From the sequence record MK250019.1: DNA of 63,688 nucleotides. One strand, written 5' to 3'. Of this stretch, positions 11,102-59,321 are shown one piece after another. Each line of letters opens with the position of its first letter. The stretch's first letter is position 1. Under the pieces are notes generated by a model. The model was not told the origin of the DNA and ran no database searches. It saw nothing but the letters and a program-made list of their open reading frames with translations. Made by a program: the position numbers and the translations under genes.

Positions 11102-11172
11102 ATATAGTTTAAAGGATTCGAACCTTTTTCTCTGCTCTCACAGTGTGTTGCCACATACACCATTAAACTATA
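11102..11172 (-). ncRNA. tRNA-like RNA with GAGA tetraloop in place of an anticodon loop
   Basis: Acceptor TATAGTTT/AAACTATA (8 bp), D arm GTGT/ACAC, CTGT-GAGA-GCAG, T arm AAAGG-TTCGAAT-CCTTT. Confidence 0.6.
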
Positions 11173-11221
11173 CATTATAAATGTCATTGATATAGTTATA
11201 TAAACATTAATTCTTAATGTT

Positions 11222-11322
11222 ATTAAAGTCAGATTCGAACTGACACCTCAGCAAGGAGATAATACCACTATTGGGTAACAGAGCATCCCAAGGCACTGAC
11301 CAACAAATTATGCCTATTTAAC
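11222..11322 (-). ncRNA. Atypical tRNA-like RNA (11-nt anticodon-position loop)
   Basis: T arm GTCAG-TTCGAAT-CTGAC, D stem AGGCAT/GTGCCT, stem TTGGG/CCCAA, short AT-rich acceptor. Confidence 0.5.
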
Positions 11323-11382
11323 AACAAACTAATGTATTAATTAATAATTATATATTTTATATGTATATTACTACATAAAGTT

Positions 11383-28028: not shown

Positions 28029-28182
28029 TGGACCCTCGTGGAATCGAACCACGACCTCTGGATTGTCTCTATAAATGGAATCGAACCATTAATAATAACC
28101 ATTAATATTATAGAGATTGATTTAATACAGTTTACTCTGTTAATTCAGTCCAGCGTACAGGCACCAGCCATACGCAAGGTCC
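28029..28182 (-). tRNA. tRNA-Phe(GAA) interrupted by a 79-nt intron (28065-28143)
   Basis: GGACCTT/AGGGTCC; CTGGA-CT-GAA [intron] AA-TCCAG. The intron holds a minimal tRNA mimic at 28065-28116. Confidence 0.85.
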
Positions 28183-28191
28183 ATTTATGTG

Positions 28192-28637: not shown

Positions 28638-28874
28638 CGGTTGTAATTGGATTCGAACCAATAATCTACCCACGACCTTGGGTCATTCTACGAGTAAACG
28701 ATAATTTTTTTATTCATTATAAGCAAATAATTATAAAATCAATAACGGTATAAGAGCTTAAGATTAATACCATTCGATCCGCAAACATCTCATATTAATT
28801 ATTATAATATTCGAAATAAATATTCATTTTAATTACCAGTTTTAACTACTCCACCTGTTTTGAACTATACAACC
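28638..28874 (-). ncRNA. tRNA-framed RNA with about 170 nt inserted in the D loop
   Basis: GGTTGTA/TACAACC-G acceptor, GTTC...GAAT D stem, ACCCA-AGGTCG-TGGGT, ATTGG-TTCGAAT-CCAAT. Confidence 0.55.
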
Positions 28875-31228: not shown

Positions 31229-31637
31229 AATTCTTTATTATATTTATCTACACTTATAATAGAAATAGTTCAAATTTTATAAAAAATAGTATACTGCTTT
31301 CCCAAGTGGTATACTATGAAATAATTCACAAATCCGATTTTATGAATTTAAAAATTAAATAGTTAATTAGGGTGGATTTGCACTTCCCTTACTCCATAGC
31401 TAAATGTTAATGATGGACCCTTCTTACTAATGAATAAAAGAAAATTGCGCAAGTTTTTATTCATTAATATGTTTAGTTCTACATAACGTAGTTCTCTACT
31501 TACCGTTAAACTTCGTTACTATTTAATTAAAAACGTTTAAAAATATATTCAGAAATTTAATATATATTCGCCTCGACGATACTATCTGAACATAGAAGGT
31601 ACATCCTTTATACATACTAAATCATATTTTTAAATTG

Positions 31638-31801
31638 CGGGAATAGAGGGAATCGAACCCACGCCCAGAGATTAGCTACATAAATTGGATTCGAACCAAT
31701 TAAACTTTATAAAGTATGATACCCAACAGCATTATGTAGTTTAATTTAATCAGGTTGTTTCCTGTATACAGTCTCTTGCTCGACCTTCGAGCTATATTCC
31801 C
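31638..31801 (-). tRNA. tRNA-Tyr(GTA)-like, short variable loop, interrupted by a 93-nt intron (31674-31766)
   Basis: GGGAATA/TATTCCC-G; AGAGA-CT-GTA [intron] AA-TCTCT. The intron holds a tRNA mimic at 31675-31739. Confidence 0.8.
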
Positions 31802-37581: not shown

Positions 37582-38040
37582 TCAATTAAAGTTTTTCATT
37601 ACTCTATCAAGATTTCTCTTATTATCTTTTTCCTTAATAGATTCTCTTTTATCATATTCTTTCTTACCCTTGCATAAAGCTATTTCTACCTTACAAAGAC
37701 CTCTATCATTAATAAACATTCTTATAGGTACAATAGTTATACCGGGAATTTTTGATTCCTTTCCAAGACGTTTAATTTCATTTTTATTAAGAAGAAGTTT
37801 TCGCGAACGACGTTCTTCCTGCTTAATATACCATCCTTTATCATAAGGAGCAACATATGAATTGTTCATCCATACTTCATTATTATTTTTTACATAACAA
37901 AATGTATCAACAAGAGAAGCTTTACCATCACGTATTGACTTGATTTCTGTTCCTGTTAAAATAATACCTGCCGTAAATGTTTCTATAAATGAATAATCAA
38001 AATATGCTTTCTTATTCTTAATGTTTATATTTGTTTTCAT
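37582..38040 (-). CDS. smpB: SsrA-binding protein
   Basis: NKKAYFDY...[14 protein letters not shown]...RKLLL...[13 protein letters not shown]. Confidence 0.95.
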
Positions 38041-56229: not shown

Positions 56230-56994
56230 ATGGAAANNNNNNNNNNNNNNNNNNNNNNNNNNNNNNNNNNNNNNNNNNNNNNNNNNCTGAAATCTTTTAA
56301 TTTTAAAAAAGAATTGAATCCTAAAATATGGAAAAATGGAAAATTAAAAGATAACATAAGAAAACGCTTAATAAAAATAGCAAAAGAATTTATTGATTCT
56401 ACTGACTTAGATTTCATTCCTATAGATATTGTTATCGTTGGCTCTATTGCATCATTTAATTGGTCAAAATATTCTGATATTGATTTACATATAATTACAG
56501 ATTTCAAATAGNNNNNNNNNNNNNNNNNNNNNNNNNNNNNNNNNNNNNNNNNNNNNNNNNNNNNNNNNNNNNNNNNNNNNNNNNNNNNNNNNNNNNNNNN
56601 NNNNNNNNNNNNNNNNNNNNNNNNNNNNNNNNNNNNNNNNNNNNNNNNNNNNNNNNNNNNNNNNNNNNNNNNNNNNNNNNNNNNNNNNNNNNNNNNNNNN
56701 NNACATAAAAAATTAGATAAAGATGCGATAAAAGAAATTGCTTCTATGTATATTAATAAAATAGAATATTATAACAGAAAATATGATGAATTAAATAGTG
56801 ATAAATCTATTTTATTATTATAGTCTAAAGTTGATTATTTATATGATTCTATTATATAGGGTAGAAAAAAATCATTACCAATTGATGGTGAACAAGCAAC
56901 AGGGAATATTGTATTTAAAGTACTAAGAAGAAGTGGACATTTAGAAATGTTAAATAATCTAAAAACAAAAATATTTGACCGATTGAATTCTATT
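56230..56994 (+). CDS. Pol-beta superfamily nucleotidyltransferase (gapped; 3' end in N run)
   Basis: VGSIASFNWSKYSDIDLH; the same frame resumes after the gap with GNIVFKVLRRSG. Confidence 0.75.
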
Positions 56995-57098
56995 NNNNNN
57001 NNNNNNNNNNNNNNNNNNNNNNNNNNNNNNNNNNNNNNNNNNNNNNNNNNNNNNNNNNNNNNNNNNNNNNNNNNNNNNNNNNNNNNNNNNNNNNNNNN

Positions 57099-57479
57099 GT
57101 CATAACACCATGCGCAATTTAAGAAATCTATGTAGACCTGTGAATTTCCATTACTTTCTATTCGTAATCGCACTGTTCCCTTATCATAATCCTGATCAAT
57201 AACATAGAATGTTACTTGTCTACCTCCTTTATTATCAGTAAAAACATCACCTGTTTTATAAACCTTATATATCTGAGTCTTTGGACTATAAATTGTTATA
57301 ACATCAGTATTAAGATTAATTGTTAAAACCATATCAGATGATTGCCAATCACCCCAGTAGTATTTACCATTATAAATCTTTGCTTCTGCAAATGATGTTG
57401 TTTTATAATATTGAATTTGTGCATGTGAAGAAATTACAAATCCAAATATCATTAAAAAAATAAAAATAAATTTCTTCAT
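57099..57479 (-). CDS. Secreted hypothetical protein (3' end in N run)
   Basis: Signal peptide MKKFIFIFLMIFGFVISSHA. Confidence 0.65.
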
Positions 57480-57501
57480 AATAAAATTAATTAAAAAATT
57501 A

Positions 57502-57992
57502 GAAGCTTAGATGAGAATCGAACTCATAAAGTTTTTAATAACTTACCACACTTATTCACATAAGCAATACTTGAGTAAACTAACAGCTCATCTGTATTTG
57601 ACTACTGATTTTGATATTATCTCATGGTTACTGACTTTTACTCTCACTACTGTTAACTATTTTTCATTTTTAAGTATTTTGTGGTCTGAACTTTTTTTAC
57701 CATATTTAAGTATGCGCGCTCCTTATTGTAATACCTAATACTCAATGATTAGGTGATAGTCTGCAAATTAACTATACTTCGTGTACTTAAACGTAGGTAT
57801 CTCCTATAAAGTCTCATCACAATTTATGCTGTAACACTACAATTTACATTTAAAATAGATTCACGTTCTATTACAATTTAGTGGAATATAATCTATTATC
57901 AAAAATAGATTAATATTCATTAGGGAGATTTTTATCACTATGTATTTCTAACATGTGTAAATATTTTTTAAACTTATTCCAAATCTAAGCTT
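57502..57992 (-). ncRNA. 491-nt tRNA-framed RNA with tmRNA-like topology but a non-Ala acceptor
   Basis: AAGCTTAG/CTAAGCTT-C, stemless D region, long interrupted helix 2, ATGAG-TTCGATT-CTCAT. Confidence 0.65.
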
Positions 57993-58024
57993 AACCATAA
58001 TAATTATTATATATTGTTAATATA

Positions 58025-58369
58025 TCAATGTCTACCAAACAAAGACAAAAACTTTTTAATTAATGAATTATTAGATTTATTTAGGTTATTATCTGTTTTA
58101 ATTACACTAATTATATTTGATATATTTGTACCTATTAGCATATCTTGACCATCAATTTTTAATGTTATATTATTATACATAATACCTTGATATGTATTAT
58201 CATCATTTAAAAATGGTATTAATGCTTTACTATACTTATTTTCTTCTTTGTTTACAGTTTTCTGATAATTAATATATGCATTGCTTTCTAATTTAACAAT
58301 CAATGCATCCTTATCACTTATATTGGTTCTTACTTTATCTCCTATATGTAAGTCTTCAATCTTTAACAT
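58025..58369 (-). CDS. Hypothetical protein
   Basis: 114-aa ORF. Confidence 0.55.
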   Translation of the reverse strand: MLKIEDLHIGDKVRTNISDKDALIVKLESNAYINYQKTVNKEENKYSKALIPFLNDDNTYQGIMYNNITLKIDGQDMLIGTNISNIISVIKTDNNLNKSNNSLIKKFLSLFGRH

Positions 58370-59321
58370 AATTTTTAATAAAAATAATTTCTTTTAATAA
58401 AGATTCAGTTAAACAGGAAATATATAATTCTTTATTTGAATCATCTAACCAATTTACTATAGCTTTATTTATATAAGATATGATGTCTAATATTTTATCT
58501 TTATGTCGTTTATCATTTAAGTATTCTTTTAATACATTAAATATTACAGTATTATCATATTTGTAATTTTTACTGAATACGAAATCGATTAATGTTTCAA
58601 ATGAATTAGTATCTGTAAATGTAGCTGTTTCTCCTAATATAAATTTAATAATTTCGTTAATATCATTTGTAATAAATTTATCATCTTCTTTTACAGTAAC
58701 TGGATTCTTCAATAATTCCCTTTTTCCTTTATATGTTTTATGTCGTAAAAATAAACCTTTATCATATGTTAATGTATATTTCCAGAAATCAGTTAATACA
58801 TGATCATCATTATATACATCAGGTATATTAGTAGGAATAAAGCTTGCTAAATCAATTAACAAATTTGTTCTATATAAACCTTTAAAGTTTGATTCATTAT
58901 TTCTGTAATCTGGTGAATGATACATGAATTTTGAATATTCTATATCATTAGAAAACATTAAATCTACCTGAACAACATCACTAACCCACTTAACACCAAA
59001 AGAAATGATATGGAAACCAGAACTAACTTTTATTTGAGGTTTATTATCAGAAAACGCTGGGCAAATCTTATTACGAATACAATTTTCTATTGCATTAATA
59101 TTGTTATCAGAGAATTCAAGTTCAACNNNNNNNNNNNNNNNNNNNNNNNNCTCATCATCTTTTTTCTTTCCAGTAGAACCTAATGTGCATGCATTAAAAT
59201 TCATTATATTTCCATCAGTATCTTTACAATTATGTGTTAAATTATCTATTACCATACTTGCTATGTATACTGCATCAAAATTTCTAACAGGCACAGAGCC
59301 TTTAATTGCCATACCACTCAT
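58356..59321 (-). CDS. Nucleotidyltransferase-like protein
   Basis: TLGSTGKK...VQVDLMF; the DxD region is hidden by Ns. Confidence 0.6.
   Translation of the reverse strand: MSGMAIKGSVPVRNFDAVYIASMVIDNLTHNCKDTDGNIMNFNACTLGSTGKKKDDEXXXXXXXXVELEFSDNNINAIENCIRNKICPAFSDNKPQIKVSSGFHIISFGVKWVSDVVQVDLMFSNDIEYSKFMYHSPDYRNNESNFKGLYRTNLLIDLASFIPTNIPDVYNDDHVLTDFWKYTLTYDKGLFLRHKTYKGKRELLKNPVTVKEDDKFITNDINEIIKFILGETATFTDTNSFETLIDFVFSKNYKYDNTVIFNVLKEYLNDKRHKDKILDIISYINKAIVNWLDDSNKELYISCLTESLLKEIIFIKNYVKD

What the first reader, a model, noticed from the sequence alone, without database searches (positions are those of the whole stretch)
57502..57992. 491-nt RNA with tmRNA-like topology but no alanine identity
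Seen: 8-bp acceptor plus C, canonical T arm, stemless D region (ATTTGGAAT), and a long interrupted helix pairing AAGTTT..TTTACAC with GTGTGGTAAG..AAACTT around about 400 nt. There is no G3:U70. A short frame MVKKVQTTKYLKMKNS lies inside. The phage encodes SmpB (37582..38040) and no canonical tmRNA is in the window. Inference: a divergent tmRNA variant or SmpB-binding decoy, or a long ncRNA matured through tRNA-like ends with the same 8/5+C signature as the intron mimics.
Basis: partly seen in the sequence, partly recalled or inferred. Interest (0 to 1): 0.75.

Follow-up and report, generated by a model that had tools for sequence, protein, structure and literature searches.

The report
Decayed intron inside a tRNA relic
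The 491-base RNA of this gut megaphage is not a tmRNA. It is the remnant of a leucine tRNA gene that still carries a crippled self-splicing (group I) intron, and it is made in large amounts and given a tRNA-style CCA tail.

Summary
The window is Prevotella megaphage Lak-A2.

**What it is.** The roughly 430 bases between the tRNA-like ends are a group I intron. Close relatives (about 80% identical core) interrupt:
- tRNA-Leu(UAA) at the classical U34/A35 site;
- tRNA-Lys(UUU);
- the primase gene of crAss-like phages.

Cutting those relatives out in silico restores callable tRNAs or an uninterrupted primase frame.

**How the window's copy has decayed.**
- The host tRNA has lost its D-arm 3' half, most of its anticodon stem and its variable arm.
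- The intron has lost its guide sequence and the U·G splice-site pair.
- The conserved P4-P5 core is replaced.
- The guanosine-binding G-C pair is now G·U.

**Expression.** In four metatranscriptomes the stretch 57502-58001 lies far deeper than its flanks.
- Contigs run unbroken across both exon/intron borders.
- The 3' end carries a CCA that no DNA copy encodes.

**Conservation.** The T stem covaries (A-U, G·U, G-C) among ten variants, and the 5' exon is invariant.

**Not a tmRNA.** The SmpB gene is real, but a canonical tmRNA lies about 300 kb away in the same genome. The inner reading frame is not conserved.

**Verdict.** An unspliced, CCA-tailed tRNA/intron relic. It is a new variant of known kinds and of moderate interest.

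The parts
58006..58034 (-). Promoter-like site: TAGACA, 17 nt, TATAAT (11 of 12 matches)
   Evidence: The RNA contigs of X2 and X8 end at 58001 and that of X10 at 58006, just downstream of the -10 box. This is a consensus match only.
57993..58001 (-). 5' leader of the transcript (AUUAUGGUU)
   Evidence: Contig ends and head-to-tail joints. The leader is variable among strains (12 of 38 columns).
57970..57992 (-). 5' exon (23 nt): base -1 plus 7-nt acceptor strand (57992-57985), D-arm remnant AUUUGGAAU (57984-57976), anticodon-stem remnant AAGUUU (57975-57970)
   Evidence: Invariant in 10 variants. It resembles the 5' exons of related tRNA-Leu genes (xGCUUxA-UG-GUGGAAU...) with an internal deletion.
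57542..57969 (-). Decayed group I intron (428 nt), ending ...GUGUGGUAAG
   Evidence: About 80% identical core to introns in Lak-B/C tRNA-Leu(UAA) and cr116_1 primase. The borders are set by homology.
57955..57969 (-). Remnant of the P1 loop and guide sequence (AAAAAAUAUUUACAC)
   Evidence: Sixteen of the 17 relatives compared have GAG or AAG at the guide-sequence triplet, and all 17 keep the UGC that follows; the window has UUUACACA. No U·G pair is possible at the 5' border.
57940..57954 (-). P2 hairpin (AUGU-UAGAAAU-ACAU)
   Evidence: The homologous hairpin covaries in relatives: CCUAU/AUAGG, CUUAUA/UAUAAG, UUCAGAG/CUCUGAA.
57924..57930 (-). P3 5' strand AAUCUCC, pairing with GGAGAU at 57799-57804
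   Evidence: Conserved in all family members.
57884..57918 (-). Replacement hairpin where relatives have the P4-P5 core
   Evidence: Sixteen distinct relatives share GAARCC, a stem with a GGUGAC loop, then GGUGAYGACGARC. The window has an unrelated AU hairpin.
57808..57815 (-). P7 5' strand GAGACUUU (bulged A and the guanosine-site G)
   Evidence: It pairs with AAAGUUC (57694-57688). An A-U to U-A compensatory change keeps the helix, but the guanosine-site pair is G·U where all 21 relatives keep C.
57784..57792 (-). P8 5' strand GUUUAAGUA, pairing with UACUUAAAU at 57704-57712
   Evidence: Twelve distinct versions of this 9-bp helix in the family, every pair kept, with compensatory changes at positions 3-9.
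57688..57712 (-). P8 3' strand, J8/7 (AUGGUAAAAA) and P7 3' strand (AAAGUUC)
57653..57703 (-). Frame MVKKVQTTKYLKMKNS*, not a gene
   Evidence: At the same place Lak-B reads AUG GUA GUA AAA UAG and cr116_1 reads AUG GUA AUG AAA UAG.
57542..57565 (-). Terminal P9 hairpin (GCUUAU-GUGA-AUAAGU) and 3' end GUGGUAAG, with the last G at 57542
   Evidence: Conserved in relatives as GCUUG..CAAG + GUGUGGUARG directly before the 3' exon. The last G is A in variant L196.
57502..57541 (-). 3' exon (40 nt): UUAUUAA, AAACUU, U, T arm (57527-57511), acceptor strand CUAAGCU, U73, C
   Evidence: T-stem pair 469:479 is A-U (A2), G·U (L196) or G-C (eight others). The RNA ends ...CUAAGCUUCCA whereas all DNA copies read ...CUUCUAAUUU.

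Best explanation
The element is a stand-alone gene with its own promoter. It descends from a phage tRNA-Leu(UAA) gene split by a group I intron at the classical U34/A35 site, and both partners have decayed.

What is left of the tRNA:
- the acceptor stem;
- the 5' half of the D arm;
- three pairs of the anticodon stem, lengthened by the old loop bases (AAGUUU/AAACUU);
- the T arm.

What has happened to the intron:
- It keeps the P2, P3, P6, P7, P8 and P9 helices.
- It has lost the guide sequence and the U·G pair that mark the 5' splice site.
- It has lost the conserved P4-P5/J4-5 core.
- It has lost the G-C pair of the guanosine pocket.

How it most likely works:
- Shown: it is transcribed from about 58001.
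- Inferred: the two ends fold into an acceptor/T-arm minihelix clamped by the AAGUUU/AAACUU helix, and perhaps by UUUAC/GUAAG.
- Shown for the CCA, inferred for the enzymes: tRNA end-processing enzymes trim the 3' trailer and add CCA.
- Inferred, about 60%: the dead ribozyme stays in place as a compact insert, so the main product is an unspliced RNA of about 0.5 kb rather than a small spliced tRNA.

Selection acts mainly on the tRNA-like end module. Whatever role the RNA has most likely runs through that module, as a non-decoding tRNA mimic. It may also have no role beyond being a well-expressed relic.
For: Identity:
- The window is Lak-A2.
- The core 57883-57663 is about 80% identical to inserts in Lak-B tRNA-Leu and cr116_1 primase.
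- Twenty-odd further relatives were found in IMG/VR.
- In-silico splicing at the homologous borders makes ARAGORN call tRNA-Leu(UAA) in LakB1, LakC1, L057, L073, L120, L032 and L155, and tRNA-Lys(UUU) in L042 and L156.
- The joined primase exons align in one piece to intron-less genes, and the joined peptide GKVTL|KIYQP is encoded uninterrupted in more than 116 contigs.

Group I anatomy in the relatives:
- The exon ends in CUU, paired to GAG with a U·G pair.
- The last intron base is G.
- The order is P7, P3', P8, J8/7, P7'.
- P8 is fully compensated in 12 versions. P7 is compensated in L151 and in the window.

Decay in the window's copy: (last G to A in L196; guanosine-site G to A in L171; insertions of 10 and about 275 nt; a 26-nt deletion).

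No tRNA is called on the joined exons.

RNA:
- Depth is 28-1600 over the element against 0-19 in the flanks.
- Contigs run continuous over both borders, and no exon-exon joint was seen.
- A CCA tail is present in X8 and X10. All ten genomic copies read CUUCUAA.

Constraint on the ends: the 5' exon varies at 0 of 23 positions, the T stem covaries, and the leader varies at 12 of 38.

The element is absent from the same locus in Lak-B1, where the two flanking genes abut.
Against: - Rfam's group I model (RF00028) matches neither the window nor the bona fide relatives, so the class rests on anatomy and context.
- Loss of splicing is inferred from sequence only. A relative in an intact tRNA-Leu (L120) also has U-A instead of U·G at the splice site.
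- Logan contigs drop rare forms, and RNA-seq libraries tend to lose RNAs of about 65 nt. A spliced product cannot therefore be excluded.
- The W-type copies are 92-99% identical, so constraint on the intron part cannot be measured. Some changes break helices (the C1 P8 end pair and the P8 insert hairpin).
- No function has been shown.
Confidence: 0.7

Rival explanations
1. The intron still splices itself. The real product is the 63-nt joined exon RNA plus CCA: a D-armless tRNA-like RNA with a 6-7 bp stem and a UUAUUAA loop (U33 and A37 in place). The abundant long RNA would then be precursor plus excised intron.
For: - P3, P6, P7, P8 and P9 are kept, and P7 was repaired by a compensatory change.
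- The last intron base is G in 9 of 10 variants.
- The exons can pair, which the Anabaena tRNA-Leu intron requires (Zaug et al. 1993, cited in PMC3984707).
- L120 shows that U-A at the splice site occurs in an otherwise intact tRNA-Leu gene.
- Small RNAs are under-sampled in RNA-seq.
Against: - The guide sequence, the J4/5-P5 core and the guanosine-site G-C pair are all changed, at positions invariant in 16-21 relatives.
- L196 has lost the terminal G, and L171 has an A-U guanosine site plus a 275-nt insertion, yet both keep perfect exons.
- The loop length varies (five or six A).
- No exon-exon joint was seen in four RNA runs, and one contig covers both borders plus the CCA.
- ARAGORN finds no tRNA in the joined exons.
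Confidence: 0.2
2. A divergent tmRNA, or an SmpB-binding decoy. The tRNA-like ends would act as a tmRNA tRNA-like domain, and the interior would carry a tag frame or hold SmpB.
For: - The topology is tmRNA-like: acceptor plus T arm from the two ends, a stemless D loop with GG, and a closing helix directly before the T arm.
- The RNA carries CCA.
- The phage encodes SmpB.
Against: - ARAGORN and RF00023 give no match, even at E<=10.
- There is no G3:U70 pair.
- The interior is homologous to introns of tRNA and primase genes.
- The frame is not conserved.
- A canonical tmRNA with tag DDEIDFRMAA* is present in Lak-A2 and in all 15 Lak genomes.
- The D-loop look comes from a deletion in a tRNA-Leu D arm.
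Confidence: 0.04
3. A neutral pseudogene: a dead tRNA/intron copy that is still transcribed from a strong tRNA-type promoter and processed by default, with no role for the phage.
For: - Catalytic and cloverleaf features are lost.
- There are helix-breaking substitutions, a 26-nt deletion, and 10-nt and 275-nt insertions in the intron part.
- The element is absent from Lak-B at the same locus.
Against: - The T-stem pair passes A-U / G·U / G-C without ever being broken, and the 5' exon is invariant while the leader varies at 12 of 38 positions.
- Phage genomes usually purge dead DNA.
- RNA levels are very high in four independent metatranscriptomes.
Confidence: 0.3

Closest known systems
Group I intron of tRNA-Leu(UAA) genes (cyanobacteria and plastids; Anabaena type)
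   Same: - The relatives of the window's intron sit at the same site (after U34 of the UAA anticodon) in phage tRNA-Leu genes.
- They have a short P1 (CUU paired to GAG with a U·G pair), a terminal G, and a P3/P7/P8 core.
- The window's copy shares about 80% of the core sequence with them.
   Different: - The window's copy has no guide sequence, no U·G pair, no conserved P4-P5 and a G·U guanosine site.
- Its host tRNA is truncated.
- Rfam RF00028 does not score the family.
- The comparison with the Anabaena and Azoarcus sequences themselves is from memory and was not tested here.
tmRNA (SsrA, RF00023)
   Same: The 5' and 3' ends form an acceptor/T-arm module with an unpaired D-loop analogue. 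There is a large insert closed by a helix, and a CCA end.
   Different: - No alanine identity pair, no pseudoknot set and no conserved tag frame.
- No model match.
- The phage's true tmRNA lies elsewhere.
'Enigmatic' introns of Lak phage tRNAs (Devoto et al. 2019, PMC6784885)
   Same: - Same genome family.
- Those short introns in tRNA-Phe, Tyr, Thr and Gly contain a stem of 8 pairs (7 in the Thr intron), a T arm and a trailing C, just like the ends of this element.
   Different: - They are 90-145 nt and nested inside complete tRNAs, with no group I core.
- This element is free-standing and holds a 428-nt group I relic.
- It is not among the tRNA-intron hosts named in the paper's text; Supplementary Table 6 was not read.
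Group I introns of crAss-like and Jug gut phages (PMC7886860, PMC12880540)
   Same: The same intron family splits the primase gene of cr116_1, IAS virus and related contigs. Gut phages are known to be rich in group I introns.
   Different: Those introns interrupt protein genes and are presumed active. This copy sits in a tRNA relic and looks inactive.
Group I-derived RNAs that no longer splice (e.g. the GIR1 lariat-capping ribozyme); tmRNA gene of Clostridium botulinum with a group I intron in its T loop
   Same: They show that group I cores can be kept for other uses, and that tRNA-like RNAs other than tRNAs can host such introns. Both are recalled from the literature and were not tested here.
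   Different: There is no evidence of any new catalytic activity here. The host is a tRNA-Leu relic, not a tmRNA.

Membership tests
tmRNA | G3:U70 pair in the acceptor stem (alanine identity) | tested here: not met
   The pairs are A:U, G:C, C:G... in the 7-bp register, and A:U, A:U, G:C in the 8-bp register.
tmRNA | Match to tmRNA covariance or heuristic models | tested here: not met
   ARAGORN finds none. RF00023 gives no hit at gathering score or at E<=10. The same tools find the true tmRNA of Lak-A2.
tmRNA | Conserved tag reading frame | tested here: not met
   The frame at 57703-57653 stops after 4 codons in the Lak-B and cr116_1 homologues. Its AUG lies in J8/7 of the intron.
tmRNA | tRNA-like domain formed by the two ends, with a CCA end | tested here: met
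   Acceptor and T arm with covariation. CCA is seen on the RNA.
tmRNA | Binding by SmpB and ribosome rescue | not testable with these tools
   SmpB is encoded, but a canonical partner exists.
Group I intron | P3/P7 pseudoknot core in the order P7, P3', P8, J8/7, P7' | tested here: met
   P3 is AAUCUCC/GGAGAU. P8 is 9 bp in 12 versions, all paired. P7 is compensated in the window and in L151.
Group I intron | 5' splice site marked by a U·G pair with an internal guide sequence (P1) | tested here: not met
   Relatives have CUU paired to GAG. The window has UUU facing UUUACAC, giving U-A at the border and a U·C mismatch beside it.
Group I intron | G-C pair of the guanosine pocket in P7 (G129-C176 in Azoarcus, PMC13168695) | tested here: not met
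   The window has G·U (AGUUC where all 21 relatives have AGUCC). L171 has A-U.
Group I intron | Terminal guanosine at the 3' border | tested here: met
   G at 57542, homologous to the last G of the relatives. It is A in variant L196.
Group I intron | Removal restores a functional host gene | tested here: not met
   Met for the relatives. The window's joined exons give no tRNA.
Group I intron | Spliced product seen in RNA | tested here: inconclusive
   No exon-exon joint in the contigs of four RNA runs, but contigs cannot show absence.
Group I intron | Match to Rfam RF00028 | tested here: not met
   No hit for the window or for the bona fide relatives L001, L002 and L006. The model is evidently blind to this AT-rich family.
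tRNA | Cloverleaf with D arm, 7-nt anticodon loop and variable region | tested here: not met
   No D stem, a one-base variable region, and a loop of 7 or 8 depending on strain. ARAGORN with introns allowed finds nothing.
tRNA | Acceptor/T-arm minihelix that receives CCA | tested here: met

The most novel reading that the evidence does not exclude
The CCA-tailed acceptor/T-arm module riding on a dead ribozyme is a working tRNA mimic of the megaphage. It could be a non-decoding RNA that is charged, or that binds a tRNA-handling factor (synthetase, EF-Tu, SmpB or CCA-adding enzyme). It could also soak up a host nuclease that targets tRNA. It may belong to the same functional class as the minihelices nested in the 'enigmatic' Lak tRNA introns.
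Probability: 0.2. Interest if true: 0.75.

Novelty: new variant of a known kind. Interest (0 to 1): 0.45.

Why it matters
- It removes a tempting false lead, a second and odd tmRNA in a megaphage that encodes SmpB.
- It explains one of the 'large, highly expressed intergenic regions' noted for Lak phages (abstract of PMC6784885).
- It shows that one group I intron family moves among phage tRNA-Leu genes, tRNA-Lys genes and crAss-like primase genes in the gut.
- It shows that Lak phages carry such introns, which the original description did not classify.
- The decayed copy is a natural case of a ribozyme that has lost its splice-site machinery but keeps tRNA-like, CCA-tailed ends under selection.
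- If the end module has a role, it would be a new kind of phage tRNA mimic.

Tried and rejected
- **Rfam at E<=10 on the element and on the relatives.** Only chance hits appeared (PrfA, a CRISPR repeat, a miRNA). There was no tmRNA and no group I hit, so these models gave nothing either way.
- **ARAGORN with introns up to 900 nt.** No tRNA at the element. Its tRNA-Leu(gag) call on Lak-B1 used a wrong anticodon stem and was replaced by the two-intron model.
- **My first P7 assignment (ACUAUA/UAUGGU).** Dropped in favour of GACUAU/AUAGUC. The latter is compensated in L151 and in the window and fits the known bulged-A/G-C geometry.
- **Reading the exons as a tRNA.** I tried a D-loop intron and a UAA anticodon in a local hairpin AAGUU-AUUAAA(A)-AACUU. 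This fails on the D stem and variable region and conflicts with the homologous 3' border.
- **Minimum-energy fold of the whole RNA (z = -1.4).** Uninformative.
- **The tag-frame idea.** Rejected because the frame is not conserved.
- **Adapter-joined contig ends at 57950 and 57971 in X13.** Judged to be library artefacts, not RNA ends.
- **A 5' partner for the orphan T arm at 28662.** Found at 28874, outside this finding.

Full report
**Where we are.** A 701-base stretch of the window around the element (57400-58100) is 100% identical to Prevotella phage Lak-A2 (MK250019.1 443265-443965). Lak-A2 is a 541-kb gut megaphage. The element lies on the minus strand in a 545-base gap. Upstream is a 114-aa ORF (58369-58025). 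Downstream is a 214-aa ORF that begins with a signal peptide (57479-56835).

The eight bases AAGCUUAG (57992-57985) pair with CUAAGCUU (57510-57503), and a C follows.
- The T arm AUGAG-UUCGAUU-CUCAU is perfect.
- AUUUGGAAU is unpaired.
- AAGUUU pairs with AAACUU one base before the T arm.
- There is no G3:U70 pair.
- The small frame is there.
- SmpB at 37582-38040 is genuine (187 bits against a cut-off of 130).
- No tmRNA is called in the window.

A scan for perfect T arms finds 20 on the minus strand and none on the plus strand. The ordinary tRNA genes end, like this element, in seven acceptor bases, a discriminator and a C. The '8 + C' signature is therefore a normal Lak tRNA 3' end in which base -1 happens to pair with U73.

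**The interior is a group I intron.** BLAST against phage genomes shows that the central 220 bases are about 80% identical to two other sequences:
- a stretch at another locus of the Lak-B genomes;
- a 569-base insert that splits the DNA primase gene of crAss-like phage cr116_1.

IAS virus has the same insert in its primase gene. Pattern scans of IMG/VR gave about twenty further relatives. Their borders are exact.
- The 5' exon ends in CUU.
- The intron ends in GU(G/A)GUA(G/A)G.
- Cutting them out in silico makes ARAGORN call tRNA-Leu(UAA) in seven cases and tRNA-Lys(UUU) in two.
- The joined cr116_1 primase exons align in a single piece to intron-less primase genes.
- The junction peptide GKVTL|KIYQP is encoded without interruption in more than 116 contigs.

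The relatives have the marks of group I introns.
- The exon CUU pairs with a guide GAG, with a U·G pair at the cut.
- The last base is G.
- The core runs P7 (G, bulged A, GACUAU), P3' (GGAGAU, pairing with AAUCUCC upstream), a 9-bp P8 that brackets a variable insert, a conserved J8/7, and then P7' (AUAGUCC).
- P8 exists in 12 versions with every pair kept and compensated changes at seven of nine positions.
- P7 is compensated in L151 (GACUG/CAGUC).
- P2 and P5 covary as well.
- The insertion site in tRNA-Leu, after U34 of the UAA anticodon, is the classical one of cyanobacterial and plastid tRNA-Leu introns (literature cited in PMC3984707).

Rfam's group I model does not see any member of the family, including the bona fide ones. 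The assignment therefore rests on anatomy and context.

**The exons are a tRNA-Leu relic.** By homology the window's 5' border is AAGUUU|AAAAAA (57970|57969). The 3' border is GUGUGGUAAG|UUAUUAA (57542|57541).

The 23-base 5' exon resembles the 5' exons of the related tRNA-Leu genes. Compare xGCUUxA UG GUGGAAU... with AGCUUAG AU UUGGAAU. It lacks the rest of the D arm and most of the anticodon stem.

The 40-base 3' exon keeps a very similar T arm and acceptor (GAGUUCGAUUCUC, xxAAGCU). It lacks the long variable arm.

The helix AAGUUU/AAACUU is what is left of the anticodon stem (AAG/CUU), extended by the old loop bases. The joined exons are not recognised as a tRNA. The 'stemless D region' is therefore a deletion scar, not a tmRNA-type design.

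**The intron copy looks dead.** At positions that do not vary in the relatives, the window's copy differs in exactly the parts that make the first splicing step.

| Feature | Relatives | Window's copy |
|---|---|---|
| Guide sequence | UUGAGUGC | UUUACACA |
| Last exon bases | CUU | UUU, so no U·G pair can form |
| P4-P5/J4-5 block | GAARCC, stem, GGUGAC loop, GGUGAYGACGARC in 16 versions | an unrelated AU hairpin |
| Guanosine-pocket pair | G-C in all 21, although my search pattern allowed either base | G·U |

The guanosine-pocket pair corresponds to G129-C176 in Azoarcus (PMC13168695).

P7 itself was kept by an A-U to U-A double change, so the helix mattered at least for a time.

Among ten natural copies of this type (Lak-A1, A2, C1, an IMG/VR genome and six metagenome contigs):
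- one has lost the terminal G (L196);
- one has turned the pocket pair into A-U and carries insertions of 10 and about 275 bases (L171);
- two have a 26-base deletion.

All of them keep the exons.

**The ends are under constraint.**
- The 5' exon is invariant in the ten copies.
- The only substitutions in the 3' exon are the two sides of one T-stem pair: A-U in Lak-A2, G·U in L196 and G-C in the other eight.
- The leader just upstream varies at 12 of 38 positions.
- The run of A in the would-be anticodon loop is five or six bases long, so that loop is not held at seven bases.

**It is expressed, unspliced and CCA-tailed.** Seven RNA runs and further likely RNA runs from animal guts and wastewater hold about half of the stretch's words. 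I laid the contigs of four metatranscriptomes from four studies on 56800-58400.
- Depth over 57502-58001 is 28 to 1600 against 0 to 19 on either side.
- Contigs end at 58001 (X2, X8) or 58006 (X10). That is just downstream of a promoter-like site, TAGACA-17-TATAAT, at 58034-58006 (11 of 12 matches).
- One 545-base contig (X8) covers the 5' exon, the whole intron and the 3' exon without a break.
- The RNA then reads ...CUAAGCUUCCA. X10 shows the same CCA.
- All ten DNA copies read ...CUAAGCUUCUAAUUU, so the CA, at the least, is added after transcription.
- No contig joins 57970 to 57541.

Contigs cannot prove absence, and RNA-seq libraries tend to lose RNAs of about 65 nt, so splicing is not excluded. 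What is shown is that a full-length, intron-containing, CCA-tailed RNA is abundant.

In X8 and X10 the CCA is followed directly by the strain's own leader sequence. These head-to-tail joints may be RNA circles or template-switch chimeras of an abundant RNA. I could not tell which.

**Not a tmRNA.**
- The interior is homologous to introns.
- The frame MVKKVQ... starts inside J8/7 and stops after four codons in the relatives.
- A related Lak genome has an RF00023 hit above threshold.
- The same sequence is present in all 15 Lak genomes.
- In Lak-A2 itself, ARAGORN calls a tmRNA with tag DDEIDFRMAA*, and Rfam gives 58.2 bits. It lies about 300 kb from this element.
- SmpB therefore has its normal partner.

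**History.**
- Lak-B1 has the two flanking genes directly adjacent, with no element between them.
- Lak-C1 and the IMG/VR genome G001 carry both this relic and an intact tRNA-Leu(UAA) gene with the active-looking intron.
- Lak-A2 has only the relic.
- The relic is therefore a displaced paralogue with its own promoter, not the decayed orthologue of the working gene.

**What is known already.** Devoto et al. 2019 described 'enigmatic' introns in Lak tRNA-Phe, Gly, Thr and Tyr. They noted that one 'may itself encode a tRNA'. In their abstract they also mentioned highly expressed intergenic regions. The text I searched names neither this element, group I introns, tmRNA nor SmpB; I did not read their Supplementary Table 6. 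Group I introns in the protein genes of gut phages are well documented.

**Verdict.** The tmRNA reading is wrong. [quoted passage not shown]
- About 0.85 that it is a group I-derived insert in a tRNA-derived frame.
- About 0.6 that it no longer splices.
- Open whether the conserved tRNA-like end module has a role of its own.

Noticed in passing
L029 460-1170 (Lak-C1), L001 1060-1803 (Lak-B1), L006 (G001 second copy): The intact tRNA-Leu(UAA) gene of Lak-B, Lak-C1 and G001 carries two group I-like introns. One of about 308 nt lies in the D loop (GGU|AAAG ... UUUUUG|AGACACG, with its own GACUAUA/UAUAGUC P7). One of about 340 nt lies in the anticodon loop. ARAGORN calls the tRNA only after both are removed, and the acceptor stems of Lak-B1 and Lak-C1 differ at five of the seven pairs yet still pair. 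To my knowledge a group I intron in a tRNA D loop has not been described.
   Followed up: partly
window 28030-28190, 31637-31801 and 11103-11332 (minus strand): These are tRNA genes with short introns in the anticodon loop (Phe GAA; the one Devoto calls Tyr GTA; Thr). Each intron holds a stem of 8 pairs (7 in the Thr intron), a perfect T arm and a trailing C. They are the 'enigmatic' introns of Devoto et al. 2019. They have no group I core, and how they are removed is unknown.
   Followed up: partly
window 28874-28637 (minus strand): Another long RNA with tRNA-like ends: GGUUGUA at 28874 pairs with UACAACC, followed by G and C, after a perfect T arm at 28662. About 200 nt lie in between, and there is a stem that looks like a long variable arm. 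No tool calls it. An HNH-type ORF lies just upstream (about 29400-29020).
   Followed up: partly
MK250019.1 142606-143017 (L157 321-715): Canonical tmRNA of Lak-A2, with tag DDEIDFRMAA*. It is conserved in all 15 Lak genomes.
   Followed up: yes
L042, L156 (IMG/VR contigs of 222 and 92 kb); L002, L028, L131, L139, L153: The same intron family sits in tRNA-Lys(UUU) between U34 and U35, and in the primase gene of crAss-like phages at ...GKVTL|KIYQP.... All three contexts share CUU just before the cut. This suggests recent movement between tRNA and protein genes.
   Followed up: partly
window 57502/58001-58006, RNA runs X8 and X10: Head-to-tail joints: the CCA 3' end is followed directly by the leader (GAAUUAUGGUU... 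in X8, UAAAUAUCUAAUUAUUAUGG... in X10). These could be circular RNA, or template switching on an abundant RNA.
   Followed up: no
L171 3192-3970 (metagenome contig UMGV01085171.1): A copy of the element with a 10-nt insertion in the P1-loop remnant and a roughly 275-nt insertion just before GUGGUAAG. The same 10-nt insertion appears in RNA contigs of X8 and X10. The exons are untouched.
   Followed up: partly
L182, element positions 84-100 (window about 57909-57893): The loop of the AU hairpin that replaces P4-P5 is inverted in one variant (UUUGAU to AUCAAA), a flip of the palindromic hairpin.
   Followed up: no
L120 (IMG/VR contig of 92 kb): An otherwise intact tRNA-Leu(UAA) gene whose intron guide reads AAG instead of GAG. 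This gives U-A rather than U·G at the 5' splice site.
   Followed up: no
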